64,000 nucleotides of DNA, from contig NW_026782282.1 of the NCBI RefSeq assembly GCF_031769215.1, positions 1,488,001-1,552,000 on the forward strand, in the 5' to 3' direction. The position numbers and the translations under genes are program-made. This stretch comes from Ylistrum balloti. Lineage: Eukaryota. The notes beneath the pieces are model-generated. The model worked only from the letters and a program-made list of their open reading frames with translations, was not told the origin of the DNA and did no database searches. Below are positions 15,717 to 64,000 of this stretch, piece after piece (the first letter of the stretch is position 1; every line of letters starts with the position of its first letter).

Positions 15717-16046
15717 NNNNNNNNNNNNNNNNNNNNNNNNNNNNNNNNNNNNNNNNNNNNNNNNNNNNNNNNNNNNNNNNNNNNNNNNNNNNNNNNNNNN
15801 NNNNNNNNNNNNNNNNNNNNNNNNNNNNNNNNNNNNNNNNNNNNNNNNNNNNNNNNNNNNNNNNNNNNNNNNNNNNNNNNNNNNNNNNNNNNNNNNNNNN
15901 NNNNNNNNNNNNNNNNNNNNNNNNNNNNNNNNNNNNNNNNNNNNNNNNNNNNNNNNNNNNNNNNNNNNNNNNNNNNNNNNNNNNNNNNNNNNNNNNNNNN
16001 NNNNNNNNNNNNNNNNNNNNNNNNNNNNNNNNNNNNNNNNNNNNNN
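15717..16046. other. Assembly gap (N run)
   Basis: Run of n. Other gaps: 27728-27859, 27889-28137, 28518-28700, 60303-60721, 63207-63350. Confidence 0.99.
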
Positions 16047-18182: not shown

Positions 18183-18626
18183 TGCATCATACAGCTATTT
18201 CGTCCTTCTAGGACCCGTCAGTGATGTTACATCATACAGCTGTTTCGTCCTTCTAGGACCCGTCAGTGATGTTACATCATACAGCTGTTTCGTCCTTCTA
18301 GGACTCGTCAATGATGCTACATCATACAGCTGTTTCGTCTTTCTAGGACCCGTCAGTGATGTTACATCATACAGCTATTTCGTCCTTCTAGGACTCGTCA
18401 ATGATGCTACATCATACAGCTATTTCGTCCTTCTAGGACCCGTCAGTGATGTTACATCATACAGCTGTTTCGTCCTTCTAGGACCCGTCAGTGATGTTAC
18501 ATCATACAGCTGTTTCGTCCTTCTAGGATTCGTCAGTGATGTTACATCATACAGCTGTTTCGTCTTTCTATGACGCGTCAGTGATGTTACATCATACAGC
18601 TATTTCGTCCTTCTAGGACTTGTCAG
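18183..18626 (-). repeat. 45-bp minisatellite array A (~10 units), inverted relative to arrays B and C
   Basis: Reverse complement of unit gaaggacgaaacagctgtatgatgtaacatcactgacgagtccta. Confidence 0.96.
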
Positions 18627-19429: not shown

Positions 19430-20186
19430 TGACGAGTCCTAGAAGGACGAAACAGCTGTATGATGCAGCATCACTGACGAGAACTAGAAGGACGAAATAG
19501 CTGTATGATGTAGCATCACTGACGAGTCCTACAAGAACGAAACAGCTGTATGATGCAGCACCACTGACGAGAACTAGAAGGACGAAACAGCCGTAACATG
19601 TAGTACCACTAATGAACCGTAAAAGGACGAAACAGCTGTATGATGTAACATCACTGACGAGTCCTAGAAAGACGAAACAGCTGTATGATGTAACATCACT
19701 GACGAGTCCTAGAAGGACGAAACAGCTGTATGATGCAACATCACTGACGGGTCCTAGAAGGACGAAACAGCTGTATGATGTAACATCACTGACGAGTCCT
19801 AGAAGGACGAAACAGCTGTATGATGTAACATCACTGACGGGTCCTAGAAGGACGAAACAGCTGTATGATGTAGCATCATTGACGAGTTCTAGAAGGACGA
19901 AACAGCTGTATGATGTAACATCACTGACGGGTCCTAGAAGGACGAAACAGCTGTATGATGTAACATCACTGACGGGTCCTAGAAGGACGAAACAGCTGTA
20001 TGATGTAACATCACTGACGAGTCCTAGAAGGACGAAACAGCTGTATGATGTAACATCACTGACGAGTCCTAGAAGGACGAAACAGCTGTATGATGTAACA
20101 TCACTGACGGGTCCTAGAAGGACGAAACAGCTGTATGATGTAACATCACTGACGGGTCCTAAAAGGACGAAACAGCTGTATCATGT
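19430..20186 (+). repeat. 45-bp minisatellite array B (~17 units)
   Basis: Unit gaaggacgaaacagctgtatgatgtaacatcactgacg(a/g)gtccta; explains ORF 19612-20211. Confidence 0.97.
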
Positions 20187-45500: not shown

Positions 45501-47217
45501 CTAGGTCCTGAAATTCCGTTCTCCATTGAGTCGTACTGCCCAAGTAAGTTCATATGTTTTTGCGGCGTCCGCGTAAGAGCTTTTTATCAGTGACTGATCA
45601 TTCTTTCTGACGGCCTGCAAAAACGTCTCCAGCTCCGTACTGTAGGAGTCACTCCCTTCAAATGTAAAATCTTTGTCCACGTCACGTTTCCCGTTCTCCA
45701 TTGAACGCATGCGTAGAATACAACTTTCCTGATATGGTTCTATTAGGGACAATTTCAATCCATCCAGCTGAACGTCAATATTTGCCTCGTATCTTGTACC
45801 AGGCAACGCAATCGAATGCATCATAGTTCCAACCCCTGCATTTTCAAATCTCCAGTGACTGATGGTGACCCGTGGGATTCTTTTGCGTGGTGGAATATCT
45901 TCCTCTGCACCCAGCGGAACATGTCCGATGTGGCCCGCGCCACTGCGGTCGTCTTCTTCAAGCATGAGTGTGTGTATGGATGATAAATCAACGTCTCCCA
46001 CAATGTACCTGGCCAGATCAAAGAAATGAGTGGCTTGCTCAATCACCGGACCACCACTCAGGTCAGCGTTATACCAATATTTATTGGTCATTTCAGTGTA
46101 TGCGTAGTAATATCGTGCATTAAATGCCATGACCTTTCCTCCGTGTTCTTTCATCAGTTCTTTCATTTTCCTAACTGCTGCATGATATCTGTAAAGTGAA
46201 GGTACGCATTATTTTGTTGAGATAGACAGCTTTTCTCATGAATATTGATTGTGCTTACCGGTTTAAACAATATAAAAAAAAACAACAATAAAATATCAAC
46301 ATGTCAAGATAACAATAATCCTAACTCAAATTCAATAAAACAATGACATAGGAAATATTTACACGGAAACTCCTCAAAAAAGTACAAGAAGAATAAGACC
46401 TAGTGTTCGGGAAGAGTGAGCGTTTACTGCTTCATCGACGACACTCGTCATAAAAACCTTGGTCAATCCAAGTAATTAATGTCACGTTCTCAAATGAGGA
46501 CAAGGTATACAACAACGAAACCAACAGAAAACGAGCGTCAGACACATTCAGCTTCATATCGCAAATATGTTTTTTCTTTTCAAAGGCTCAGTGCGGAAAA
46601 GTTTTAATTTACTTTTTGGGACCATAAGTCTGACCATCAATTATCAGGAAGCAGTAGGGGATTTTGTAATTTTTAATATAGATATAAGTTATATTTCTTT
46701 TATATCTCAGTGATGCCTTAAATACTTTAGTTTATTACAAGTGAGAAATTAAATACCTGAACATATATCCTACAGAGAGAACCACATTGGATTCCTCTAC
46801 TGCTTTCTGCATAGCTGCAGCATACAGCCGGAAGTCGTCAAGCGGCAGAACTGACATGGGCTTCTCTACAAATACGTGGATGCCTGCCCGTACACACTGC
46901 AGTTCAAGATCCTTATTATACTGAAGGCTACCCCGAGCTACGGGTGGCACACCTATAAAAACAGCGTCTGGACGTTGTGCAATTAATTCGGCGAGGTCAG
47001 CCATTATTCGACATTCCGTGTAGAAGCTGCCATTTTGTGACGCCAACCGTGTCTGTAATACCTGCTTCGCTTTCACTGTGTCGGGGTCCACAATGCCTAT
47101 AACTTTGAAACCACCAAGACGTTCAAGACGTGACGCATGGTCCCAGGAAACGTTCCATCGACCGAAATTAATACATCCAGCTCCTAAAAAGCCGATTCTT
47201 AAGATGATGTCCGACAT
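45501..47217 (-). CDS. Gfo/Idh/MocA-family NAD(P)-dependent oxidoreductase, copy A (382 aa); join(46757..47217, 45501..46188)
   Basis: Rossmann GFLGAG, VDPD, VFVEKP, VGYMFR|YH, GGPVIEQATHFFD, SYADAAKTY. Donor TTCAG|GTATTT at 46757/46756, acceptor tttacAG|A at 46189/46188 (phase 2). 1149 nt, stop TAG 45501-45503. Confidence 0.9.
46310..46530 (-). repeat. Dispersed retroelement 3'-end repeat inside the intron of oxidoreductase copy A
   Basis: aactcaaattcaataaaac...gtgttcgggaagagtgagcgtttactgcttcatcgacg...aaaccttggtcaatccaagtaattaatgtcacgttctcaaatgag. Confidence 0.8.
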
Positions 47218-48567
47218 ACCTGCAGTGGATAGATATTGTATCTTTCTTTAATATTTGTACATACACAGACAGGAACTTCAAGAAATATTTATTGAATTTA
47301 AAACGCAACTACTACAGATATCACGATTTATCATTTCCTTTTAATCCGTGAACTGATAAAATGATCGGATATCCTTCCCGTCCCTGCAACAAAAACTTCT
47401 TACGAAGACTGTCTTAATATAGTGTCATAATACTGACAGACTATAACCTGGACACAGCAGCATGGTGCCCTATCCTGTTCTATTGTAATGTCGTCGGACC
47501 ATCGCTACGCTTGTCCAAACAGCAGAAAGTTTTATAAACTGTATTGACTTTTATCGGTCAGGAGATTCGTGACGGACAATCAACTCATAGATTACAAGAG
47601 AGCTGTGCCAAGGTTGACATTAGAAAAAGGAACAGTTGTTAAGGGGAGGGAGAGGGGGGAGAGAGAGAGAGAGAGAGAGACAAGATCGATGTCTTACACC
47701 CTACCTACAGGACATTTTGATTAGATACACTACTGAAAAATGTTACATCTAGCAAGGTAAAACAACAAATAGTGATCACAATATTCAGGACAAAATAGGA
47801 AAAAAATGGTTGATTTGAAAAAATTTATCTGATTTTAGTATTTTGAAAAAATAGTATCAATAATGAAGCATGCTGCCATTCGGATGCCAACATAATATAA
47901 GCATACCATTGTTAGTCATTCTATTTGACTCTGGAACAGTTTTCACAATACCTTACCCTATTGCTTATTCATATATACTAAAAGCATAAAAATAAATGCA
48001 AGAATATTTCCTGACTGGAATTGTTTTTGGCATTTCTACAAAAGAATGTATTAACAGCGAGCTTATGGTCGCGCGTCGACAACCATTCAGGAAATAAGTT
48101 GATTTCTATAATGTTAAAACTAAGTCATACCTTATAAGGTTTAGATATGGCAATGCAATTTCCAACAACGATTAATCCTTTCTATAGTAAATATCATATG
48201 CAATGCAATTAAGAATCTGATATTAAATGGTCTTATTCCTTGTTTGTATATAGTACCTGAGCCAAGGGTTTCCCTGTGTGGAGGATTGGCCAGCTCCTTG
48301 ATACCAGAATATTGTTCACGCTAGACTCTTTACACCAGATAAAGCAAGTACACATATATCCTTATCGTAAATGCTGACAGATATCTATGAATTATAAATT
48401 GTCACTAGGAAGTAGACTATGACCAATTCTTAAATTTGCATCAAACAACACTTTAACGAAGATTGTTTCTTTTATGTGTACACATTATATTACTATATCA
48501 TGGTGAACTTACAAACAATTTTAGTAGATATAATAAATTATTAACGTATTAGAATTCTAATTCAGGA

Positions 48568-48681
48568 CACTTCATCTTGCCTTCGCTCTGACGCCGTATT
48601 TCAATTTGTACGTTCAGCTGGCGGCTTCATACGAACTGTCGATAAGGGATCGTTTCCTCTGACGAACAGCTTTAATAAATA
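48568..48681 (-). pseudogene. Orphan remnant of the 3' end of oxidoreductase exon 2 (fifth, deleted copy; copy-C-like terminus)
   Basis: Minus strand reads FIKAVRQRKRSLIDSSYEAAS*TYKL..IRRQSEGKMK with an internal stop and a deletion; the KMK end matches copy C (GEAKMK*). Confidence 0.8.
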
Positions 48682-48884
48682 TGATTACGTCGACTTCGAG
48701 TTAAAGAAGTTCTTTTATTTTAATTTAGGTATGGTTGACAATCAAGGGATGCAATCCCAAAACATGTAATAATTAAAACTGAATATTGTATTAATGTAAG
48801 TAAGATATACGCAGGCTTTGGTTCTGAAGGATTCTACATGTATAAGTTGATTGTGATAGAGAATAAAAAGCTATTTTCCAAGCT

Positions 48885-51027
48885 TTATATCTTGACTTCG
48901 CCTTGTCGCCGTATCGCCCAGGTCAATTCGTACGTTTTCATGGCGTCTTCATACGAACTCTTGATTAGGGATTGATTCCTCTGACGAACAGCTTTGATAA
49001 ATGTGTCCAATTCGTTCAGATACGTGTCGTCGTTTTCGAAAACGAAATCTTGGTCTTGGTTGGGATTTCCACCCTTTAAGTTTCGGACTCGGAGTACACT
49101 GGTACTCTCATAAGGATCAATGAGAGAGAGCTGGAGACCGTCCAACTGAACGTCAATGGTTGCTTGGTAACGACTTCCTGGTAACGTAACAGAGTGCATC
49201 AAAGTGCCAAGGCCACCGTCCTGGAATCTCCAGTGACTGAGTGTGACTCTAGGGATCCTCTTGTTGGACGGAATGTCGTCTTCTGCCTGGCTAACTAGGT
49301 TGTTCAGCTTACCGGCTCCACCCTTATCAGAATCGTTTAGCATAATAGTGTGCAGTGACGTCATATCTATATCCCCGACTATGTACCGGGCCAGGTCACA
49401 GAAGTGGGTGGCCTGTTCTACGATTGGTCCCCCGAAGAAGTCAGTGTTGAACCATTGTTTGTTTGTTTCCTGTGTGTAAGCAAAGTAATAGCGCGCATTG
49501 AAAGCCATAACCTTCCCACCATGGTTTTGAATTAACTCCTTCATCTTCAGAACGGCAGCATGGTACCTGGGGAAATGCAATGTTATATTATTGTTTTAAA
49601 GACAATTTGCTAAGGTTGACTGAAAACAAACACAAAACAAAACAAAAAACACACAGAAAAAAAAAAACAAAAACAAAAACAAAAAACACCCTCCTAGAAA
49701 AGTATCATATCAAATTTATCATAATTTTGGTTAGATATGGTGTTATGATAGTGTTTTTCGGTGATTTAAAAACCTGGTACAATGAAGGTTTTATTTTACA
49801 ATATTTTCTCATTTGAAAAGCTATTTTAAATGACAGCTTCAAAAGGATTGGATGAGTTTAAAATTGTATTCTGTAAAGTGACTTTACTTATGATGGGTCG
49901 TGACGAAAACGATGGTTTTCAAAGTGTGCTTTTGTACATTATTTCCACCAGACAATATTTGTGTGACGATCAGGCGTCATGTTGCATTAAGAATTACAGT
50001 CACAATTGCAGGGAAAGGGTTCACAAATTGTTTTCGTTTAATCTTTATTATCTAAAAACTATTAAATACGTATTTCCTTGGGGAAGAAATATTGCGGGAA
50101 GAAATTTGTGGAATCTGTAGGTTTATCACGTAGCTATGTACCTGTGCAACATAACTCTTCGTTTGCAAGGGGCAAAGACGACACACAGCTCATTCGCTTT
50201 TTTTATTTTTGTTTCTATGGAAGCTGAGAAACGAACTGTTCAATACTAATGGCATGCGTGTTCCCTTTCGAACCATACTTTAGTCGTATTACACTGGATG
50301 ATATCAATGGGCCTCCCATATTTTTTCACTGCTACTACGAGAAGACCTCGCCTCTACATAACCCTGTCTGTTCACGGGCGACAATGCCAACAAGCAAAAT
50401 CTATTCTGTATGCACCTAAACTAGTATCGTAACATATATGGTAAAAACTGCTCTAAGCTGAAGTACTTTCACCACCCAAAGTCGATTTTGGAACTTTCGA
50501 ATAAGATTCATAACAATTCTAATATTTCATTGATGCAAAATAATCCCGTCTTATAGACCTTACCTGAACATATAACCAACTGACAGCACAACGTTGTTGA
50601 TCCGACATGTTTCTGAAACTGAATATGCGTAAGCAAAGAATTCTTCTGGTGGCACGATTGAAAGCGGCTTTTCAACAAAAACATGTATTCCAGCCTGAAC
50701 AAACTCCAGTTCTACGTTCTTTCCTTCTATAGGAGACCCTCTATGTGCTGGAGGAATCCCGATGAAGGCCACATCCGGTTTCATTCCCAGTAACTCCTTG
50801 TAGTCGGTTAGTAGTCGGCAGTTTGCATACATGTGTTCGTGGTCAAGAGAGGCGAGTCGTTCATTTAGAACCTTTTCACTCCGACAGGTGTCAGGGTCAA
50901 CGATTCCTATCACCTCTAGTCCACCAATCTTCTCTAGGCGTGACGCATGATCCCATGGTACTTCCGGTCTACCAAAGTGAATCGCTCCAGCCCCAATGAA
51001 TCCAATCTTCAGAGTTTTTTCATTCAT
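48885..51027 (-). CDS. Gfo/Idh/MocA-family oxidoreductase, copy B (381 aa); join(50564..51027, 48885..49566)
   Basis: GFIGAGAIHFGRPEVPWDHASRLE, EKP, GGPIVEQATHFCD. Donor AG|GTAAGG at 50564/50563, acceptor ttccccAG|G at 49567/49566. 1146 nt, stop TAA. Confidence 0.92.
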
Positions 51028-52591
51028 GCCTGCACTTCTGTGATGTTCAAAAATTTAAGCAGTCATATATATACACCAAGTTCCTTTATAAACAAAATCA
51101 TAGCAATAACAACGCCCGAGGTATGCTACTTAACAAGATAAACCATAGATTTTCCGTAATGCATATTTATAATTATTATGTATGTTGAACTAGTTGTACA
51201 CTAATGTATGATAAAATAACAAACACCATAAACGACGTCTATTTGTTTACCAATACGTTAACACGTGTCTGTGCATACCTTGATTTGACCTCTTCTGTAC
51301 ACACCCTTCACCAATCTGTCCGAGAAAAGACTGTCCGCTTAAAAACATCTCAGGTAGATAAACAAGTCAGATGTCTGTTAACAAATCAGAATCGCCACAC
51401 GACTTCGCCCGAAAATCACTGTTGGGTATAGTAACAGTGTATAACTTATCAAGCTGCGTGTTCGCTAGATAATCATTAATTTCACAACAATTGCAAAACA
51501 ATTTTTTCCAACTTAAATGAATCCCCCTTTGAGGGCTCGGGTGAAAGCTCGCGACAATCTTACTGAGGGAGGAAATTGAGTATCCACGTGGTCGGCCAGG
51601 AGACGCATGTCCATTATGGAATCGAATACCGGGTGTCCAGGAGCAAGGCGACTGTGTGACCACTTCACCAACCGACCACCTTAAGGTTTTGATATTATTT
51701 CTTCTTAAAACCTTGATTAAGATAAATCATATTGTCCATCGTGGTAGTGTGATCATAACATATCAGTACTGTACACAGATATCTTTAGGCGGGATACCAA
51801 GGATTATACATTGTTATTATCGTCTTCTAGGACACAAAAGTCTCCCCAATTATTTCACAATATGATTTCCACTGATTATTCCTCCGTTCTGTGTTGTATG
51901 TGGCCCAGAAGTAGTTTCATTTTACCAGCGACAGCGAAGATGTTATTGTTGAATAGCCAGCATACCAATGTTCTTTGATTGAAAGTAGTTCATTTGTTAT
52001 ACTGTTAACATCTCGTATCCTATAGATTGCCTCAATGATGTTTTTATTGCTAACAGTTATCCACGAGTTATATTTCCAAAACTGTTGAAATAAGTATTTA
52101 TATTTATCCACGAAATCAGGTGTAAGTTTTTTTTCAATATCACGAAAATTAAGCCCCGAAAAAATACTCGATTTTACACTATAGCTTGTTCAATTCAGAG
52201 AGGCATCGCCCAAGCAATGTACTGATAATTGAATGATATTGGTCTAGTAGTGTAAATGTTATGTTATAAATGGTTAAAATTATAGAATTTATATAACAGT
52301 GTATTATTTTCTTAATGTATTATGTTTAATCAATCCAAGGAGAAAGATGCTGAATAATGTGCCAAAGGATTTAGCGATCTAAAGTACGAAAACGATATGG
52401 GAAAATTATGGAAAATAACCTAGTTGACTCTAGTTTCTTCTTGTTTATAAAAAATATGTTCTTTACACTAAACAAACGGTTAAAAAGTAGAAAAGCATAC
52501 ATGAATAATCCCGGACGTCGTAATTTATTCTATAGTGAGTACATCATGGTATGATTAATGTAGGTGACATAAAACGATGGCTTTATGTTGT

Positions 52592-54431
52592 TCACTTCAT
52601 TTTGGCCTCTCCCTGTCGCCGTATCGCCCAGGTAAATTCGTATGTTTTCATGGCGTCTTCGTAAGAACTTTTGATTAGGGATTGCTTCTTTTGACGAACA
52701 GCTATAATGAATGTATCCAGTTCTCTGAGGTACATGTCGTTCTCGAAAACCAAGTCTTGGTCCTGGTTGGGATTTCCGCCCTCTAGACTCCGGACCCTCA
52801 GGATACTGGAACTTCCGTACGGGTCTATCAAGGAGAGTTGGAGACCGTCCAACTGAACATCAAAAGTTACATGGTAACGACTTCCAGGTAGCGTAAGAGA
52901 ATGCATCAAAGTACCGAGACCACCGTCCTGGAATCTCCAGTGACTAAGTGTAACTCTGGGGATCCGTTTACAAGAGGGGATGTCTTCTTCTGCTTGGTTA
53001 GAGAGATGATTCAGCTTACCGGCCTCGCCCTCGTCTGAATCGTTTAGCAAGAGCGTATCTAGTGTCGACATGTCGACTTCCCCACAAATGTACCGAGCTA
53101 GGTCACAGAAGTGGGTAGCCTGTTCTACAATTGGTCCACCGCTGATATCGGAGTTGAACCAGTATTTGTTAATACCTTCGGTGTAGGCAAAGTAATAGCG
53201 GGCATTGAATGCCATCACTTTTCCGCCGTGTTGAGCAATCAATTCCTTCATTTTTAGGATGGCTGCATGGTACCTGCGAAAATATCCATCGAAATTGAAT
53301 AACATTTATATCTCATTAGCCTCAGATGGGGTCTTATCATTTTAACATAACAAAGCAGGTATGAACTAAACGACGTTTAAATGAAATAAATTACTAAATA
53401 GAGGTTGATTCGTGAATGATGATGATGAGGAGGAGGAGGAGGAAAAGGAGGAGGACGTGATGAGGATGGTTATGGTTGTTGATGTGTTGATGATGAATTT
53501 TTATTTGATATTTTTACACATTTCATGATTACATAAGCGTGTTCTAATCCTTGCTGCAACGTATTTAGAGAGAATAAGAGAATAACCTTCTATATGTATG
53601 CAACTGGGAGGCTAAATTCATGCCACTTAGGAAGCTTTAAAGTATCGCAACAATAAGAAGGTGTTTGTTGTGGGTAATGAGATAGTGAGAGATATAATAG
53701 CGTTTAACGCCCAGTCAGCATTGGGGATTTCAGAAGAATGCTATTCTAAAAAGATAATCTTGGAAATGCGTGAATGTACAATTCTTTTCTGTATTCAGAA
53801 ATTCATTTCAGAAGAAGTGCTTGGAATAGTGATTCTTCATCGCCCTAAGGGTTTTGCCTATGGACACTGTGATACTGGAAAGGATGACAAAATTATTTCT
53901 CATATGTCATATATGAGATATAAACTATACATGATATACAACCAATGATCAAGAAAAGTGTCCCTACCGAAACTTATAGCCAACTGACAGCACGATGTTG
54001 TTGACCCGACACGCCTCCGTTACTGCGCATGCGTAGGTCGAGAACTCTTCTGGTGGCAAAACCGACAGAGGTTTTTCTACAAAAGCATGTATCCCAGCTC
54101 GAGTGAACTCAAGTTCTATATTCTTTCCCCCCAAAGGGGATCCTCTATAACCCGGGGGACTGCCGATGAAGACAACATCCGGGTTCATTGCAAGTAACTC
54201 CTCGTAGTTTGCAAGGAGACGGCAGTTTGTGTACATGTGTCCGTAGTCCGGAGAGGCCAGTCGGTCCTTAAGTACCTCGTCACTCCGACGGGTGTCAGGG
54301 TCAACAATTCCAATTACCTCAAGTCCGCCAATCTTCTCCAGGCGCGACGCATGATCCCAGGGTACTTCCGGTCTACCAAAGTGAATCGCCCCAGCCCCAA
54401 TGAATCCAATCTTGAGTTTGGCTTGATTCAT
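52592..54431 (-). CDS. Gfo/Idh/MocA-family oxidoreductase, copy C (381 aa); join(53968..54431, 52592..53273)
   Basis: Same motifs (GYKFR variant). Donor CG|GTAGGG at 53968/53967, acceptor tttcgcAG|G at 53274/53273. Start MNQAK at 54431 chosen by alignment with copies B and D. Stop TGA. Confidence 0.9.
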
Positions 54432-55599
54432 AACTGCACTTTTGTACTGTTCGGGATTAGAATAAAAATCAATTGGGATTATGATAATAACATGGTTCAG
54501 TGACGAATACCTTTTCAAGAGGATCATCAATGAAGCTTGATATTGTCCACAAATGTTGAGATATACTGCAAAGTATCTTATTTTTACCGAAGTTAAATCA
54601 AAGCCCGGACTAGGGTTCCCTATATTAATGATGTATCTTACTCTAAATTATGAAAAGATGCTATTCATTTGTGTGTGTTTTGTACAATCTTTTTTTAATA
54701 AAATTGTACAGTAACTATTTTATCGACTTTTCTTCGACTCCGGAAACAATAAAAAATTAGAATGCTTTTACAGGATCTCTTTAGCGTTAGAAGTATAAGT
54801 GAATGAGAAATCTAAATTTTATCTATCAGGCTATTACACCGCAACATGACAGTGTATTGGGATGTCGTATTAAGGACTATATAGCAAAGCCTATCCTGTT
54901 GTGACAAAATACCAGCGCGTCGTCTCATTTAAAATAAAACCATATTTCGCATGGTTAGCACATGCTATGTAAGAGTATAACAAATTGTTTCTGGTTTTTC
55001 TAGAAGTTTTCCCATATTTGGACTCGCAATCTTCGTTGTATCATTATCTGTCTGTCTACAATCTATATTTGTACATTAATGTGCTATTCGCATGTTTGCC
55101 TTTCGCACAAACTTAACAAAACAAATATTAAGATTGTCATTGCTAATAGAATGTCAGCTGGAGATATCGCCCTTCCAGTGTGAGATACAAATTTCTTCTC
55201 AAAGAACAATTAATACTTCTAAAATCCACATAACGAATGTGATAACGGCATTATTTGATGTAGTTGAAGGTAGCCTCGAGTAATCTGGTAGACCAAACAG
55301 TGGATTTACATATATGAGGAAAATCCGAGAAAAAGCGTTTGGATACCTCACTAGATATGAATTTGAGTTTCATTTAAATAAATGATTTAGCTGCTATGCT
55401 GTATTTGTATTGATTTAACTACCAGCGTATAATTTAATTTTCAAAACAAAGAGCTGCGATATTATGAAGTACATGATAGAAAACATCTCACTTTATTTAC
55501 TGCAGTATTTGTCATTGCATTTTATTGTAACATGCTAGAGTTTGTTCCTGTTAGTTGTGAAGCAGGGGAAATAGATTGCTTAAAGGAGTGCTCTGCATC

Positions 55600-55960
55600 T
55601 CAACCTTATAGTGTTTACATGTCGCTAGTGAATCGATTTTCATTGGCTTGTTCCCGATATCACGATTTCCATACGAGATGTCAGCAACTGATAAACAATT
55701 TCACGACACAGGGTTTCGAGAGATGCAGGCTGATGAAGATACCGTGGAAGTATAAAAGTCGTTATTATGATCTCGAACGTGTTTGATGCTCATTAATTGC
55801 TTGTTGGTCCAATTTTTACCTCGTTCTTATTTGGGAAGGTGACATCACCAAGGTTTACATGGCGAAATCAGTCGATGAAACATAAGATTTTCACTCTTCC
55901 GGACCTCCTAGAATTTCCATGCAACTCTTTTTGACCAAATTTAATGAAATTTTAGTACGA
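55600..55960 (+). mobile_element. Decayed C-terminal RT (thumb-region) fragment of a Penelope-like element, followed by its 3'-end repeat
   Basis: QPYSVYMSLVNRFSLACSRYHDFHTRCQQLINNFTTQGFERCRL resembles the PAYGVYISQLIRYSRACS.Y.DF..R...L..KL..QG motif recalled from invertebrate PLE-type RTs. Directly followed by gtgacatcaccaaggtttacatggcg...gtcgatgaa, the window's dispersed repeat. Confidence 0.7.
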
Positions 55961-57820
55961 GTTAAGGTGTTGCTGACATGTTGGTATTTTCTTTGTTGTT
56001 TATTGCAGTGTTGTTGTCAAAAGGACATATTACGAGCATATATAGCTTGCCTAAGAAATTATGCAACATGTTGTGTTTTCAACGCCTACCTAGTCTAAGG
56101 TTAAAACAAACAAGATACGTGAATCTGTGCATATGTCAGCTGAGAAGCGCCCTTAAAGCTTTAACGACATCTGCGTGGTTCTGAGACAGGTTTCATAGAC
56201 TGTAATTAGTTTGAAGACAGAACCCGCAGATACATTGAGCTATATTTTCATTCTTTTTAGTGGTGGAACATAGGTCCCTATAGGAATTTGAATGAAAGAA
56301 GTACTTCCGAACTTTGTCGCACTTTGCATGTCTGTGCATTTAATGGAGTCCATTTTACTACCGATTTAGGTTTGGAGAAGCTTAAAGCTGAGTTGATCGG
56401 TATATATATATATATGTTGCGACAGATCCATTTATCACATGTAGACAGTTCATTCTTTTGATATGCCCCTACGTGATAATGAAATGTAATTTTATAGGAA
56501 TGATAATAAAATTACTTAATAACAAGGTACTTGGTGTATTTTCTTGGGTGTAAGGCAAGTGCAAGCTTCTCTAAGTATTGTTGTTATGGCATTACACTAC
56601 TGTTGCATATTACAAGTAGATATCTATTACCACACAATGTGGTAAAATATCAGCTATTCAAATAATAATTCAAAGATAAATAACCCTTTCTTTGCCAACG
56701 TAGTATTTCTTCCTATAAAACAGTTTCCTTTTATCTACTATCTACTTTGACCTCTATCAGTTTCGTCATATCATATTTCTTTATATTCTCATTCAAGAAT
56801 TTTCATAACATTTTTTCTTCGCTATCAATTAAAGTCAAGAATTTCTGACCACTTAAACACATCATATATGTATCAACAATTAAACAGACCAGGATTTAAT
56901 TGTTTTTTAATTTTAAAAATGTCATTAAAGGTTTGACTTACTATAAATTGAAATACAAACAGCGTTTTAAGATCCCATGGTTAAACAAATCGCATATTGC
57001 AAAATGAAATTATAACAAAATCAAAATCTAACGACCTTTTAACTTAAACAGTTATTCACGTATATGGCTCAAACAAATTAGAACACTGTAAGAATGTAAT
57101 GACTGTTTAACTGGGGAAACTATCACAAATGCCTAACACGAATATGATGAAATATACTCTGAAAATTTATACGATTTCTACAAACTACAAAAAAAACTGT
57201 TCTCAATGTAAACTTATACAATGCTCACCTGTTGACTTGACCAAACTAGAGCCACAATTGTGTTTACTTTTGTCCACAGATAAACCGTCTGGAGTTCTTA
57301 TCGCAGATCAAGGACAAAAGGGAAGAGCTAGGCGCTTTAGTGTTGACAAAAAATTGACAACTCGTCCCTCAGCGGACAAGAAAGATTTTAGAATATTCTG
57401 TTGTTTTACGACCTGGATTCGTTATGATATATCTTACTGATATTGGTCAATATCGCAACTGCAACATATCAATAATCAAATTCAATATGCAGAACTTCAC
57501 ACGGTAAATGATTACCCGTTTAACTAATATCCGTGTAACTCGAATTTTTTCATGTTCCCGTCGACTTCTAGTTAAAGAAGTTTGACTATAATTTCTATAT
57601 GCAATAACAAATACAAATGTTTATGTTTAAGATCTGAAATCAGGTATTTCTTTCTCGTTATTAAAAGAATTATGACCATGAAAGGGTGTAATCCATATAT
57701 GTATTAAGATTTTAAGATATGATCTTGTTTCTCCGAACATGTAAGATATACACAAGTTTTGATTCTAAAGGATTCAACGTGTATTAGCTGATATTTAAAA
57801 AAAGCTGTAGATCGAAGGCG

Positions 57821-59212
57821 CTATATCTTGACTTCGCCTTGTCGCCGTATCGCCCAGGTCAATTCGTATGTTTTCATGGCGTCTTCATACGAACTCTTGA
57901 TTAGGGATTGATTCCTCTGACGAACAGCTTTGATAAATGTTTCCAACTCTCTTAAATACGTGTCGTCGTTTTCGAAAACGAAATCTTGGTCTTGGTTTGG
58001 ATTTCCACCCTTTAAGTTTCGGACTCGGAGTACACTGGTACTCTCATAAGGATCAATGAGCGAGAGCTGGAGACCGTCCAACTGAACGTCAATGGTTGCT
58101 TGGTAACGACTTCCCGGTAACGTGACAGAGTGCATCAAAGTGCCAAGACCACTGTCCTGGAATCTCCAGTGACTGAGTGTGACTCTAGGGATCCTCTTGT
58201 TGGCGGGAATGTCGTCTTCTGCTTTGTCTGCCACGTACATTAGCTTACCAGCATCTCCCTTATCCGTATCATTCAGCATGATAGTGTGCAGTGACGTCAT
58301 ATCTATGTCCCCGACTATGTACCGAGCGAGGTCACAGAAGTGGGTAGCCTGCTCTACGATTGGTCCACCGCTGAATTCGGTGTTGAACCAATATTTGTTG
58401 ACTCCTTCAGTGTAGGCAAAGTAATAGCGGGCATTAAATGCCATCACCTTTCCCCCATGTTGAGCAATTAGTTCCTTCATTTTGAGGACGGCCGCATGGT
58501 ACCTGCAACAAAACTAGAAAATTACATTTTTGGAAAGCAAGGTTGTGATATCAATTTTCAACTTGATTCTGTATTTCCTCTGTTTTAGAACATAACAGAC
58601 TCGCTTTAATCGGCGATATTGCCTTGTCCATATGACATGTTGACTCGTTTCCTCATGAAGTGGAATTGTTAACTTTGTTAAGACTATTTCTTATTTATAC
58701 AGGTACACATTGTACGGTATGATGACTTCAATTATGAATTAATCCTACCTGAACATGTACCCAACAGAGAGGACAATATTGTTGGTCCGACATGCATCCG
58801 CCACTGCGCCTGCGTAAGGAGTAAACTCTTCCGGTGGCACTAGCGAAAGAGGTTTTTCTACAAAAACATGTATTCCAGCGCGGGCAAATTCTAATTCAAG
58901 ATTTTTGCCCTCTTTTGGAGATCCTCTGTAAGCTGGTGGAATTCCTATAAAAACAACATCCGGTTTCATTCCCAATAACTCCCTGTAGTCGGTTAGGAGT
59001 CGGCAATTTGCGTATATGTGTCCGTGGTCAGGAGAGGCCAGACGTTCGTTTAGTACCTCTTCACTCCGACAGGTGTCGGGGTCAACAATTCCAATTACCT
59101 CCAGTCCACCAATCTTCTCCAGGCGCGACGCATGATCCCAGGGTACTTCCGGTCTCCCGAAATGAATCGCTCCGGCTCCAACAAACCCAATCTTGAGAGT
59201 GGCTTGACTCAT
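57821..59212 (-). CDS. Gfo/Idh/MocA-family oxidoreductase, copy D (381 aa); join(58749..59212, 57821..58502)
   Basis: Same motifs. Donor AG|GTAGGA at 58749/58748, acceptor ttgttgcAG|G at 58503/58502. 1146 nt, stop TAG. Confidence 0.92.
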
Positions 59213-62200
59213 AATTTTGCTGTGATGTTCAAAACTAGAACAGAAGAATTTTCAGATTTCAAACATCGCACTTTTTCTGTTGATGCTAGCCAACTTTCAT
59301 AGAATGTCATGATGAACAAATGGTTCTGCAGCAAATTACATTTGCCAACAGCATTTCTATATCAAAAACAGATATTTTTTTACCATCATCACAGTTTCAG
59401 AATTTTATGTCAGCTAATTTATCATCAACAGAACATTATTTAAAGGATGAAATGTTTTTTACTTTCTTAATTTGAAGAGTTTTTTTTTAAATAAATCGAC
59501 ATTTCTAAAAATCGTACATATTCTGCAAACTGACAGTTTGTTATCGAATTTCAATCCTGTTTGGTATAATGTTGAATAAACGTATAATTCGCTGATTAAA
59601 ACGTCCTAACATGTCCAACTTTTGACATATGTATCGACATTTTGATCCTTCAGCAATACCTTCAAAATCAGTTTGTAGAAGAGTTGCCCAATTCAACATA
59701 TAGTTAAGTTTCAGTTACCTTACATTTCATTATTTCGAGAGTGAGAACAGAATGCAACACTTTTGTTGCGCGTGTATGTACGGTGGGGATATTCCACAGC
59801 TAATGCCCCAAAATGTGGTATAAAACACTCGATTCTTGTAAAATGTCTAATTATGTTACCAAAGCTGGTAAATATATATACATCATGTTATTTCTACATA
59901 CAATTCAAAGCTAAATACAGTTTGTCCAACGGATCAACAGTATTCAGAAACACAGACTACAAGGTAATAACTACTGGTTTTTCATTCCTTTAATCTATAT
60001 AGACGAAACTATCCATATACCGGGGCATAGGTATTATTCGAGGTTCTACAACTACAAACGACTGTGTAATATTCCTGTTAATCTTATAGGTGTACCGTTA
60101 TTCAGTTACGTGTTTGCACGGGATTAATGATTTTTTTTTTATTTTCTCCGTTGCAACTGTATTGGTCCTGTTCTAGGAGTTAAGCATGGATGAGTATGAC
60201 AACATACAGATCCAGGATTTCTAATTCCATACTGATAATTTACATTCCATACTAATTATTTACTCAAAAGAGCATTGAAATGGTATGCTTACTAAAGACA
60301 AANNNNNNNNNNNNNNNNNNNNNNNNNNNNNNNNNNNNNNNNNNNNNNNNNNNNNNNNNNNNNNNNNNNNNNNNNNNNNNNNNNNNNNNNNNNNNNNNNN
60401 NNNNNNNNNNNNNNNNNNNNNNNNNNNNNNNNNNNNNNNNNNNNNNNNNNNNNNNNNNNNNNNNNNNNNNNNNNNNNNNNNNNNNNNNNNNNNNNNNNNN
60501 NNNNNNNNNNNNNNNNNNNNNNNNNNNNNNNNNNNNNNNNNNNNNNNNNNNNNNNNNNNNNNNNNNNNNNNNNNNNNNNNNNNNNNNNNNNNNNNNNNNN
60601 NNNNNNNNNNNNNNNNNNNNNNNNNNNNNNNNNNNNNNNNNNNNNNNNNNNNNNNNNNNNNNNNNNNNNNNNNNNNNNNNNNNNNNNNNNNNNNNNNNNN
60701 NNNNNNNNNNNNNNNNNNNNNTATATTTATGATAGAGTTTACTCCACTTCCAAATTAATAGAAATAAATCAATTTAATCTATTTCAGCCTTTTCCTAGGT
60801 TAATGGTTTACCTTGGTACTTTGAAAAGATCGTTTACACCTTGCTGTCAAAAGGTTCTTTCATACGACTTAACAACAAGTATAATGTGACAAGAATGTTT
60901 ACATAGCATTAGAAATAGTGGCAGGGTGCGATGAAATGATTTGTATATGCATTCGACAAGGAAATACGATGACAAAGACATACCAAGATGTACCGGTATT
61001 CATATATAGATTTATCGATAAACTATCAGTAGTATTTACGTAACGCCAGTCTACAAAGTGTATGTGATAAAAAAGATTATGAGTCTTAAAGTAAGTAAAT
61101 TCCGATCTATCCAGAAGCAGTTTTATGTTGCATTTCATACAAAACAACTGATATACATCGTTCAACTATGTATTGTATTATGTGCCATCGTGTTCATTTT
61201 GCGTTGTATGTCCACGCAAAGGCTAACTAGGGTATCTTTGGTTGTTTGCGGTAATTCAGTTTATGTAGCGCAATCATACTGAAATGTCATTAACTTCTGA
61301 CATCTGAATGTGTCGAACATTTTGAGCTCAACATGGAGTGTGAAGTAAAGATTGCAATGACGTAGATATGCCATTGCCTCGTGAGAGGCCACATAACTGT
61401 TAACTGGTTTCCTCATGAAGACAGAGACAACGACACAAAGAAACTGTTGGGACACTGAGGACTGGGTAGGTGTGTGTAGAGGGGAGGATATTGTTTAAGA
61501 AGAATTCAAGAAAAGAGAAAAGGTCCCAGATTTAGTCGCCTCATACGATCATGCAGTGGGAACAGCAGGTACAATTCTTACGCCCTACCTGCAGGGCACA
61601 TGACAATAACTGTTCAGATGCAGGTCTATTCATCTAACGAGAAAAGTGGGTTTTTTCTGTAACAAAAGTATTGTTATAGAGATATGTCGACTTACACTTA
61701 ACAGCATTAAAATTTCTAAAGAATTGAGTTCGACCTCCTATCAATCAGACCTATTTTGTTACTTCTTTAACCCACGCTTGCGCCTACGTATCAGTTAATT
61801 TCTTGCCAATTTTCAGCCCGACCTTAATTCTAGATATTGAAGAGTGGAAAAGCATGAAAACATTGTAAATCCAGTGGAAATAAACATTTCTAAGGACCAC
61901 GAGTGTCAGTTAAACACATTACTACTCTTTTATCAGTGTATAACCGTTGTAATAAAATCCACTACATTTCAATACCTACCCATTGTTTCAATCGTAACAT
62001 TACCAGAGATTGGTATGGATTAGGAAAACCGTCAATTTTCATTTCATATTAGACTCATGGAAGTTTCCGAGAACAGCAGTGTGTATCATTAACACGTGAA
62101 TTATACCATTACCCTGTTATCAGTGCAACACTAGCGTGATAAAACCCCTTACATTTTAATACCTAGTCGAGCTTTGATTAAATAAGCTAGCCATTGTTTC

Positions 62201-62955: not shown

Positions 62956-64000
62956 TATTGTCTTATTAATCAGGCTCTGAACGTATTGTTTTCATGAGTG
63001 CTTGCGAAAGTATTCCAGTTTTCACGTAAACGGAATCTTACAAAAGACAGTCCTTTTGTTCCCATAACCCTCGCCATAGTCTCCTTAACACATTAAATTA
63101 ATGAATAGACGATTTTTCAGTCTTGTTTACGTGTGTCGGTGTTTGTGTTGGGGGGAATCGGTGTATGTGTTGGGGAGTCGGTGTGTGTATGTGGGGGGGG
63201 GGAGGTNNNNNNNNNNNNNNNNNNNNNNNNNNNNNNNNNNNNNNNNNNNNNNNNNNNNNNNNNNNNNNNNNNNNNNNNNNNNNNNNNNNNNNNNNNNNNN
63301 NNNNNNNNNNNNNNNNNNNNNNNNNNNNNNNNNNNNNNNNNNNNNNNNNNGATCCTGAGAGCGACATGATCGTCTAAAACTACAGCTCGCTTGCAGCGTC
63401 ATCTCATGCATAGTCTGTTTTCAGTATAATATGAGCATGTGGGTGTCTAGCTACGTTGTTTTTTGTGATATCGGTTGGACAACCAGTGTATTGTATCATA
63501 GCGTCATTCCACTAGTGGTCACATACTTCACAGACACTGTTTCAGGTATGGATATCAAACAAGCAATGTGGCTTCCCTCTTCTTTTTGATGTTGTATGAT
63601 CCTACCAACAATACGACCCTGTGGAACACTTTTACACTCATCGACGATCCGGATAAGATTTTGTTATAATTTTGCACTAGATCCTGTGCTTTTTGCAGAA
63701 AGCAAACATAATTTTGCATATCTTGTTTTCCATTTTTTCCTTTTTATAACATCAACAAAGGAAACTAGAGAAGGAGAGAAAAAAACTTCAGACACCCAGT
63801 ATAGAACATGCTCTGACTGTGGTAATTTATAATTTGTTTTCTCACTGGTTGGCTGGTAAAGATGCTAAATCCAGAGAAAAATATATTGTGACTAGCACCT
63901 GTGAACCGTGGTCCAAGGTCACTAAAGTATTCTGAATTAACGAAACGTGACAGTGCGTACACTGGAATAATAGGAGTCGGTAGATTATGTGAATATGTAT

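What the first reader, a model, noticed from the sequence alone, without database searches (positions are those of the whole stretch)
45501..59212. Four-gene tandem array of an atypical Gfo/Idh/MocA oxidoreductase in an animal genome
Seen: four intact 381-382-aa paralogues, same strand, one coding intron each, with a Rossmann GxGxG-like motif, EKP, and E-x-x-x-H (EQATH) where inositol-type dehydrogenases have D-x-x-x-H. Established: the familiar animal members of this family (DHDH, biliverdin reductase A, GFOD1/2) are usually single genes. Inference: the N-terminal GAG(A/C)I(H/N)FG..E.PW.H..RLE signature is what I recall from an uncharacterised, mainly fungal subfamily (e.g. S. pombe SPAC26H5.09c-like), not from those animal enzymes. 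That recall is unverified. A patchily distributed, possibly laterally acquired enzyme amplified four-fold and kept intact suggests a lineage-specific sugar/polyol or xenobiotic redox pathway of unknown substrate.
Basis: partly seen in the sequence, partly recalled or inferred. Interest (0 to 1): 0.7.

Follow-up and report, generated by a model that had tools for sequence, protein, structure and literature searches.

The report
Scallop tandem array of PF08635 oxidoreductases
Four intact neighbouring genes in a scallop genome encode an uncharacterised sugar-type NAD dehydrogenase that most animals have lost, and the evidence says scallops inherited it from early animals rather than picking it up recently from microbes.

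Summary
The window comes from the scallop Ylistrum balloti. It carries four same-strand, two-exon genes of 381-382 aa. All four share one phase-2 GT-AG intron at the same codon, and their proteins are identical to RefSeq models LOC132554579, -81, -93 and -95.

All four are Gfo/Idh/MocA enzymes of the PF08635 ('ox_reductase_C', S. pombe UNK4.17-like) subfamily. EKP, E-x3-H and the Asp after strand beta-2 are invariant across the family.

The copies are old: dS is 0.6-1.0 or saturated. They are under purifying selection, with dN/dS about 0.11. Orthologous copies exist in Pecten and Mizuhopecten.

Named animal hits are limited to bivalves, a nemertean, krill and three sponge classes.

Recent lateral acquisition is not supported:
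- Animal sequences form one clade with a species-tree-like order.
- The nemertean gene shares the scallop intron exactly.
- Fungi, Amoebozoa and a few Planctomycetota-type bacteria also carry the family.
- The deepest branching is unresolved.

The likely function is a cytosolic NAD-dependent dehydrogenase acting on a ring hydroxyl of a sugar or cyclitol. The substrate is unknown. This is an ordinary, already annotated gene family with modest interest.

The parts
58749..59212 (-). Gene D (LOC132554595, P0001) exon 1: Rossmann NAD-binding half, residues 1-155
   Evidence: ATG at 59212 and GT donor after 58749. PF01408 E 2.5e-16.
57821..58502 (-). Gene D exon 2: PF08635 C-terminal half, including the stop codon
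   Evidence: AG acceptor before 58502. PF08635 E 2.3e-36. 100% identical to P0001.
53968..54431 (-). Gene C (LOC132554581, P0007) exon 1
   Evidence: PF01408 E 6.9e-15.
52592..53273 (-). Gene C exon 2
   Evidence: PF08635 E 7.8e-40.
50564..51027 (-). Gene B (LOC132554593, P0002) exon 1
   Evidence: PF01408 E 2.5e-16.
48885..49566 (-). Gene B exon 2
   Evidence: PF08635 E 1.9e-41.
46757..47217 (-). Gene A (LOC132554579, P0015; the divergent older paralogue) exon 1
   Evidence: PF01408 E 7.9e-17.
45501..46188 (-). Gene A exon 2
   Evidence: PF08635 E 3.6e-38.
48587..48679 (-). Relic of a C-terminal exon (equivalent to residues 344-374), with in-frame stops, about 200 nt downstream of gene B
   Evidence: tblastn 64% identity, E 1e-6. 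The translation shows stops.

Best explanation
The region is a bona fide scallop (Ylistrum balloti) tandem array of four expressed-type, selectively maintained genes. They encode cytosolic enzymes of the PF08635 branch of the Gfo/Idh/MocA superfamily.

Mechanism (inferred):
- The N-terminal Rossmann domain binds NAD(H). An invariant Asp44 at the end of strand beta-2 favours NAD over NADP.
- The C-terminal alpha/beta domain holds a sugar or cyclitol.
- The K120 (EKP) / E205 / H209 triad transfers a hydride from a secondary ring hydroxyl to NAD+, or the reverse.
- This matches inositol 2-dehydrogenase and levoglucosan (sugar C3) dehydrogenase, except that Glu replaces the usual Asp.

Origin:
- The family is old in Amorphea (animals, fungi, Amoebozoa).
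- It was present in the animal ancestor and was lost in most animal lineages.
- It was retained in sponges, bivalves, a nemertean and krill.
- It was duplicated in tandem before scallop genera diverged.

The gene models, family membership, selection, tree and shared intron are shown here. The cofactor, the chemistry and the substrate class are inferred.
For: Gene models:
- Pfam gives PF01408 plus PF08635 well above the gathering cut-offs.

Fold:
- The AlphaFold model has pLDDT 91.2 and pTM 0.91.
- Its best PDB folds are levoglucosan dehydrogenase, GFOR, 1,5-AF reductase, scyllo-inositol DH, glucuronide-3-DH and SqgA, at TM 0.7-0.76 and 14-21% identity.

Catalytic residues:
- A profile-versus-PDB search aligns EKP with EKP and E205/H209 with the D/H of TM0414 and levoglucosan DH. 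D44 aligns with the Asp of 'ISD'.
- D44, E119, K120, E205 and H209 are invariant in 28 diverse members.

Selection:
- dN/dS is 0.113-0.116 for the B/C/D pairs, with dS 0.59-1.03. A versus the others is saturated.

Conservation in scallops:
- Pecten maximus has tandem copies.
- Ylistrum_A groups with Pecten_4 at 100/100. Ylistrum_C groups with Pecten_2 at 95-96 SH-aLRT.

Careful ML tree:
- Animal clade 98/85.
- Bilaterian clade 100/98.
- Nemertean plus bivalves 100/99.
- Bivalves 99/93.

Sponge and other labels:
- Sponge members come from Oopsacas, Sycon and Oscarella.
- Fungal-clade members include a chytrid, Neolecta and Amanita. Amoebozoan members include Balamuthia, Vermamoeba, Endostelium and Luapelamoeba.

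Intron and loci:
- The phase-2 intron lies in the same Arg codon in Tubulanus (CG|G) and in scallops (AG|G).
- The krill gene spans 77 kb.
- The Sycon pair lies next to a C-type lectin gene.

Transcription in related bivalves:
- Full-length 378-383-aa ORFs sit on Logan contigs of 1171-1504 nt, too short to hold the intron. That these are transcripts is an inference.
Against: - No member of PF08635 has a tested activity. The literature search found only expression data and one phylogeny.
- All NCBIfam equivalog scores are far below cut-off, so the substrate class rests on fold and motif analogy at about 15% identity.
- The deep backbone of the tree is unresolved, and quick trees disagreed on where fungi and bacteria attach.
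- The free ML tree does not recover eukaryote monophyly. The constrained tree is only 2.4 lnL worse (p-AU 0.30).
- Absence from other animal phyla rests on named hits in capped lists (120 rows). Many unlabelled exon-like fragments fall nearest to the animal clade and could be further phyla.
- There are no transcript data for Y. balloti itself.
Confidence: 0.72

Rival explanations
1. Ancient lateral transfer at the base of animals. The metazoan stem acquired the gene from a Planctomycetota-like bacterium, or such bacteria acquired it from an early animal relative, independently of the copies in fungi, Amoebozoa and protists. The gene was then inherited vertically and lost repeatedly.
For: - Scallop proteins are as similar to Planctomycetota proteins (up to 47%) as to krill or nemertean ones, and more similar than to fungal ones at 42-44%.
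- One quick tree grouped bacteria with animals at SH-aLRT 93.
- The careful tree leaves animals, two bacterial groups and the other eukaryotes as a polytomy.
- Only about 27 of 185,579 prokaryote species genomes carry the family, nearly all PVC bacteria. That narrow spread suggests transfer in one direction or the other.
Against: - Eukaryote monophyly is not rejected (p-AU 0.30, delta lnL 2.4). It was recovered in the outgroup-rooted quick tree at SH-aLRT 90 and as a bipartition at 98.
- The fungal branch is long, which lowers fungal identity without implying transfer.
Confidence: 0.18
2. Recent lateral acquisition by bivalves or scallops from a fungus, protist or bacterium, followed by four-fold amplification.
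For: - Named animal hits are few.
- The family is best known from fungi, and it has been reported as a fungus-to-hornwort transfer with later duplication (PMC7027989).
Against: - The animal clade includes three sponge classes, krill and a nemertean, at 98/85, with species-tree-like order.
- The intron position and phase are identical in the nemertean and the scallop.
- dS between copies is 0.6 to above 1.
- The paralogues have separate orthologues in Pecten and Mizuhopecten.
- The array shows no compositional anomaly.
Confidence: 0.03
3. The array is microbial contamination or a mis-assembly, or some copies are pseudogenes.
For: A relic fragment lies downstream of gene B. Bacterial homologues exist.
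Against: - The genes have spliceosomal GT-AG introns and sit in AT-rich animal-type DNA on a 2.29-Mb contig.
- A Tc1/mariner element and an ANF-receptor exon lie in the same window.
- All four ORFs are intact, keep every catalytic residue and show dN/dS about 0.11.
Confidence: 0.02
4. The proteins are not simple dehydrogenases. They are NAD-dependent oxidoreductive glycosidases or redox-neutral isomerases (like SqgA, GH109 or GH4-type chemistry) that keep NAD as a tightly bound cofactor.
For: - SqgA (8qc3) is among the fold hits and has the highest sequence identity of them, at 19%. It also gives weak sequence hits, and GH109 appears at E 9.5e-4.
- In one Planctomycetales clade the homologue lies next to a GH4 NAD-dependent glycosidase and a GlcNAc-2-epimerase-like gene.
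Against: - The best fold and profile matches are plain dehydrogenases: levoglucosan DH, inositol DHs and GFOR.
- The neighbourhood signal is limited to 5 of 23 bacterial loci.
Confidence: 0.1

Closest known systems
PF08635 / IPR013944 'putative oxidoreductase C-terminal' family (S. pombe UNK4.17 = YEAH_SCHPO; 'NAD-binding dehydrogenase')
   Same: The architecture is the same: PF01408 followed by PF08635, about 380 aa. PF08635 scores are 125-141 bits against a cut-off of 22.5. NCBI names the scallop orthologues 'UNK4.17-like'. Family-wide invariants are shared: GAG..FG, W25, H27, D44, EKP and GGPxxEQATH.
   Different: The animal members form their own clade. The fungal members sit on a long separate branch at only 42-44% identity. 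No member has a known substrate. The fungal genes are known only as stress- or stationary-phase-regulated.
Levoglucosan dehydrogenase (PDB 6a3f/6a3g/6a3i), a sugar C3 dehydrogenase
   Same: It is the best structural match, at TM 0.73-0.75 and E 9e-22. It is the second-best profile hit, at E 7e-13. EKP and the catalytic His align.
   Different: Identity is about 15%. Glu205 aligns with its Asp. The NCBIfam equivalog score is 39 bits against a cut-off of 650. The scallop proteins are not members.
myo-Inositol 2-dehydrogenase IolG and relatives (TIGR04380; PDB 3ezy, 4n54, 3mz0)
   Same: It gives the best profile hit in the PDB (3ezy, E 3e-14). The K/D/H triad aligns position for position with K120/E205/H209, and the NAD-type Asp after beta-2 aligns too. 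The nearest non-PF08635 clusters in the 1.84-billion-protein search are IolG-like.
   Different: Scores are 34-50 bits against a cut-off of 355. The motif is E-x3-H rather than D-x3-H. There is an extra insert after the glycine loop, and the C-terminal sheet is longer.
Hornwort PF08635 genes (Anthoceros angustus; PMC7027989, Fig. 4b)
   Same: The Pfam family is the same, and the genes were also duplicated after arrival in the lineage. That published tree already includes metazoan, stramenopile, bacterial and fungal members.
   Different: That paper infers fungus-to-plant transfer. Here the animal genes form their own deep clade with a shared spiralian intron, which argues for vertical descent.

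Membership tests
Gfo/Idh/MocA superfamily | N-terminal Rossmann NAD(P)-binding domain (PF01408) with a glycine-rich loop | tested here: met
   PF01408 E 7e-15 to 8e-17 against a cut-off of 24 bits in all four exon-1 translations. G(F)(V/I/L)GAG(A/C)I(H/N)FG is present.
Gfo/Idh/MocA superfamily | EKP motif with the catalytic Lys | tested here: met
   E119-K120-P121 is present in all four copies and invariant or near-invariant in the family. It aligns to EKP of 3ezy and 6a3f.
Gfo/Idh/MocA superfamily | C-terminal alpha/beta domain with GG-x3-D-x3-(H/Y) | tested here: inconclusive
   The fold is met, at TM 0.7-0.76 to many members. The motif reads GGPIV-E-QAT-H, with Glu aligned to the canonical Asp. 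This is conservative, but it is not the literal motif.
PF08635 ox_reductase_C (UNK4.17-like) | Score above Pfam's gathering cut-off on the C-terminal half, and the best-scoring C-terminal family | tested here: met
   Scores are 125-141.5 bits against a cut-off of 22.5. This is far above PF02894 and PF22725, at 23-35 bits.
PF08635 ox_reductase_C (UNK4.17-like) | Clusters with family members in a tree, apart from other Gfo/Idh/MocA enzymes | tested here: met
   A 100/100 branch of length 0.66+0.66 separates the family from IolG-like outgroups.
Inositol 2-dehydrogenase IolG (TIGR04380) | Equivalog score at or above 355 bits | tested here: not met
   34.3 bits for P0001 and 49.7 bits for P0015.
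Levoglucosan dehydrogenase (NF052479) | Equivalog score at or above 650 bits | tested here: not met
   About 39 bits.
UDP-GlcNAc 3-dehydrogenase (NF040723) | Equivalog score at or above 450 bits | tested here: not met
   49-51 bits.
Familiar animal Gfo/Idh/MocA enzymes (DHDH, BLVRA, GFOD1/2) | Closest relatives carry these names, or the BLVRA-type C-terminal domain is present | not tested
   I made no direct comparison with these proteins. None of the 120 best rows or 26 carries such a name, and Pfam reports no BLVRA-type C-terminal domain.

The most novel reading that the evidence does not exclude
PF08635 enzymes catalyse a still-unknown step in the breakdown of a diet-derived microbial or algal sugar or cyclitol. 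Under this reading the family moved between PVC bacteria and early eukaryotes or animals. Among animals it has been kept, and repeatedly tandem-duplicated, mainly in marine suspension feeders: sponges, bivalves and krill. That would make the scallop array part of a lineage-specific nutritional pathway with a new substrate specificity, linked to the Glu-for-Asp catalytic variant.
Probability: 0.15. Interest if true: 0.55.

Novelty: new member of a known kind. Interest (0 to 1): 0.3.

Why it matters
- This settles a tempting horizontal-transfer story. A 'fungal-looking' enzyme in a scallop is an ancient animal gene that most animals lost, not a recent import.
- It marks PF08635 as a compact family with a clean catalytic signature (K/E/H) and no known substrate. 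The search found about 200 clusters at 50% identity among 1.84 billion proteins.
- The family spans animals, fungi, Amoebozoa and Planctomycetota-type bacteria. The four scallop paralogues, the sponge and nemertean pairs and the bacterial homologues give a ready panel for de-orphaning it.
- Beyond that, this is an ordinary tandem gene family that RefSeq has already annotated.

Tried and rejected
- Single-exon phmmer against the PDB gave nothing significant. The only hit below E 0.01 was a spurious match to mitoribosomal mS33.
- The first cluster look-up returned no organism names.
- The neighbourhood analysis of 23 bacterial loci gave a weak signal only. GH4 lies next to the gene in 5 loci, a GlcNAc-2-epimerase-like gene in 3 and an acetyltransferase in 3. 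A second 'cluster' was an antisense-ORF artefact of high-GC DNA.
- Quick trees conflicted. Basidiomycetes were sister to animals. Bacteria were sister to animals. Eukaryotes were monophyletic. I treat the backbone as unresolved, following the careful tree and the AU test.
- The scan's own notes held nothing on this locus or family.
- The literature holds no biochemical characterisation.
- Contamination, pseudogenisation and recent HGT were considered and rejected, as set out under the rival explanations.
- The third word-index protein search and the second structure job were not used.
Full report
**What is there**

ORF listing and direct reading show four minus-strand genes between 45501 and 59212. 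Each has an exon 1 of about 154 codons ending ...SVGY(M/K)FR and an exon 2 beginning YHAA(V/I).... The word-index search with exon 2 of gene D, given by reference, returned a 100% identical 381-aa RefSeq protein of the scallop Ylistrum balloti (LOC132554595). It also returned three further Y. balloti proteins on the same 2.29-Mb contig.

A script located the boundaries that reproduce those four public proteins exactly.

| Gene | Exon 1 | Exon 2 | Intron (nt) |
|---|---|---|---|
| A | 46757-47217 | 45501-46188 | 568 |
| B | 50564-51027 | 48885-49566 | 997 |
| C | 53968-54431 | 52592-53273 | 694 |
| D | 58749-59212 | 57821-58502 | 246 |

All four introns are GT..AG, and all are phase 2 in the same Arg codon.

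**Procedural note**

I submitted no joined model of my own to any search or fold. Full-length analyses used the public proteins P0001, P0002, P0007 and P0015 returned.

The one exception is. That script concatenated the exon strings in memory only, to test equality with those proteins. Nothing joined was saved, printed or searched.

**Family**

Every exon 1 matches PF01408, the Gfo/Idh/MocA Rossmann domain. Every exon 2 matches PF08635 'ox_reductase_C' at 125-141 bits against a cut-off of 22.5, far better than the generic C-terminal families. NCBI names the Pecten and Mizuhopecten orthologues 'UNK4.17-like' after an uncharacterised S. pombe protein. I could not verify the specific locus it named, SPAC26H5.09c.

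In an alignment of 28 diverse members, D44, E119, K120, E205, H209, D212 and R215 are invariant. The GAG..FG..W.H..R.E signature is nearly so. NCBIfam equivalogs score far below their cut-offs: IolG 34-50 against 355, UDP-GlcNAc 3-DH 49-51 against 450, and levoglucosan DH 39 against 650.

**Structure and chemistry**

AlphaFold2 on that alignment gave a confident model, with pLDDT 91.2 and pTM 0.91. Foldseek placed it among sugar and cyclitol oxidoreductases at TM 0.70-0.76 and 14-21% identity:
- levoglucosan dehydrogenase
- GFOR
- 1,5-anhydrofructose reductase
- scyllo-inositol DH
- glucuronide-3-DH
- the oxidoreductive sulfoquinovosidase SqgA
- KijD10

A family profile against PDB sequences gave TM0414 (3e-14), levoglucosan DH (7e-13) and inositol dehydrogenases. 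The printed alignments put EKP on EKP. They put E205/H209 on the canonical Asp/His, and D44 on the NAD-type Asp after beta-2.

From the established mechanism of this superfamily (Lys/Asp/His, or Tyr), I infer an NAD-preferring dehydrogenase or reductase acting on a secondary ring hydroxyl. There is no signal peptide, so the protein is presumably cytosolic. The substrate is unknown, and no member has been assayed. The literature offers only expression changes in fungi and one phylogeny.

**Are the copies functional and how old are they?**

All four ORFs are intact and keep every catalytic residue. Nei-Gojobori estimates were computed exon by exon with the split codon skipped.

| Pair | dN/dS | dS |
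|---|---|---|
| B-C | 0.113 | 1.03 |
| B-D | 0.116 | 0.59 |
| C-D | 0.113 | 0.92 |

A versus the others has saturated dS and dN of about 0.33. So the duplicates are old and under purifying selection.

Pecten maximus carries tandem copies too. In the trees, Ylistrum_A pairs with Pecten_4 and Mizuhopecten_2, and Ylistrum_C pairs with Pecten_2. The array therefore predates the split of scallop genera.

Short Logan contigs of 1171-1504 nt carry full-length ORFs from related bivalves. They are too short to contain the intron and so look like transcripts. This is an inference, and there are no such data for Y. balloti itself.

**Distribution**

Named animal hits in two word-index searches are limited to the following taxa:
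- Bivalves: Pectinidae, Potamilus, Pinctada and Mytilus.
- The nemertean Tubulanus, with two genes.
- The krill Meganyctiphanes.
- Sponges of three classes: Oopsacas, Sycon (two adjacent genes) and Oscarella.

No gastropod, cephalopod, annelid, insect, cnidarian or vertebrate name appears. The lists are capped at 120 rows. Many unlabelled exon-sized fragments fall nearest to the animal clade and could come from further taxa.

I ran the exhaustive profile search of 1.84 billion cluster representatives because the claim rests on absence of relatives. It shows a small family, with 214 clusters at E<=1e-30. Among the full-length clusters, only one further Tubulanus paralogue and one unlabelled sequence joined the animal clade.

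Outside animals the family occurs in these groups:
- Fungi, from a chytrid through Neolecta to basidiomycetes.
- Amoebozoa: Balamuthia, Vermamoeba, Endostelium and Luapelamoeba.
- Unlabelled protist transcripts.
- About 27 of 185,579 prokaryote species genomes, almost all Planctomycetota. Single Lentisphaerota, Myxococcota and Hydrogenedentes-type MAGs also carry it, at 36-47% identity to the scallop protein.

**Phylogeny**

The careful tree used IQ-TREE LG+C20 PMSF on 76 rows, rooted on IolG-like outgroups. Supports below are ultrafast bootstrap / SH-aLRT.

| Clade | Support |
|---|---|
| Animal clade | 98/85 |
| Bilaterians | 100/98 |
| Nemertean plus bivalves | 100/99 |
| Bivalves | 99/93 |

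The sponge lineages are unresolved at the base of the animal clade. This order follows the species tree.

The backbone joining animals, the other eukaryotes (94/90) and two bacterial groups is unresolved. Quick trees disagreed there. An AU test does not reject monophyly of all eukaryotic members (delta lnL 2.4, p 0.30).

**Independent evidence**

- The Tubulanus gene has its single intron at exactly the scallop position and phase, CG|G against AG|G in the Arg of MFR|YH.
- Sycon has a different intron, near residue 351. Oopsacas has none.
- The krill gene spans 77 kb.
- The Sycon and Tubulanus pairs lie beside ordinary animal genes, a C-type lectin gene and BORCS6.

**Conclusion on origin**

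Recent lateral acquisition by bivalves is rejected. Contamination is excluded by the introns, the composition and the genomic context.

What stays open is the very deep history. The animal copy may descend from the same ancestor as the fungal and amoebozoan ones, which I favour. Alternatively it may reflect an ancient exchange with PVC bacteria. I put that second possibility at about 0.18.

**Function hints from bacteria**

The hints are weak. In one Planctomycetales clade the gene sits next to a GH4 NAD-dependent glycosidase. A GlcNAc-2-epimerase-like gene, GH123 and an SDR lie nearby. This is consistent with carbohydrate catabolism but is seen in only a few loci.

**Verdict**

The subfamily assignment and the patchy distribution are supported. 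The lateral-transfer idea is not supported.

This is a real, already annotated, selectively maintained tandem family of a known but biochemically orphan Pfam family. I classify it as a new member of a known kind, with interest of about 0.3.

Noticed in passing
window 37401-38507 (-): An intact 368-aa Tc1/mariner-type transposase ORF (DDE_3 plus HTH_Tnp_Tc3_2). It sits in a local GC peak of 0.45, about 7 kb from the array.
   Followed up: partly
window 4610-5062 (-): An exon with a hydrophobic N-terminus that looks like a signal peptide and the start of an ANF_receptor ligand-binding domain (PF01094, E 3e-9). It is probably the first exon of a receptor guanylate cyclase or glutamate-receptor-type gene.
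   Followed up: partly
window 18185-18626, 19430-20186, 34495-35341: Three arrays of a related 45-bp satellite (about 10, 17 and 19 copies, 89-92% matches). The first is in the opposite orientation to the second. They create long spurious ORFs.
   Followed up: no
window 3098-3918 and 11584-12609: A 30/60-bp tandem array (about 14 copies of the 60-mer) and a 22/44-bp array (about 40 copies). Both give long repeat-derived ORFs on both strands.
   Followed up: no
window 48587-48679 (-): A 31-codon relic of the family's C-terminus (FIKAVRQRKRSLIDSSYEAAS*TYKL...) with in-frame stops, about 200 nt downstream of gene B. It is a remnant of an abortive or decayed partial duplication.
   Followed up: yes
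L037:2355-7848 (Sycon ciliatum) and L039:933-4412 (Tubulanus polymorphus): Both species carry their own same-strand tandem pairs of this gene, so tandem duplication of PF08635 genes recurs independently in animals.
   Followed up: partly
L004, L005, L009, L012 (Planctomycetales MAGs) and L008: The bacterial homologue lies next to, or within 4 kb of, a GH4 NAD-dependent glycosidase. In three loci it is also near a GlcNAc-2-epimerase-like gene and an acetyltransferase.
   Followed up: partly
L027:837-1541 (MAG labelled Hyphomicrobiaceae) and L030:3680-4874 (MAG labelled Armatimonadia): The L027 match contains a 180-residue stretch (residues 21-200) identical to the Phycisphaeraceae protein P0101, which suggests a binning error. 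The L030 match contains two stops, so it may be a pseudogene or a frameshifted assembly.
   Followed up: no
window 15717-16046, 27728-28137, 28518-28700, 60303-60721, 63207-63350: N runs (gaps or masked stretches).
   Followed up: no
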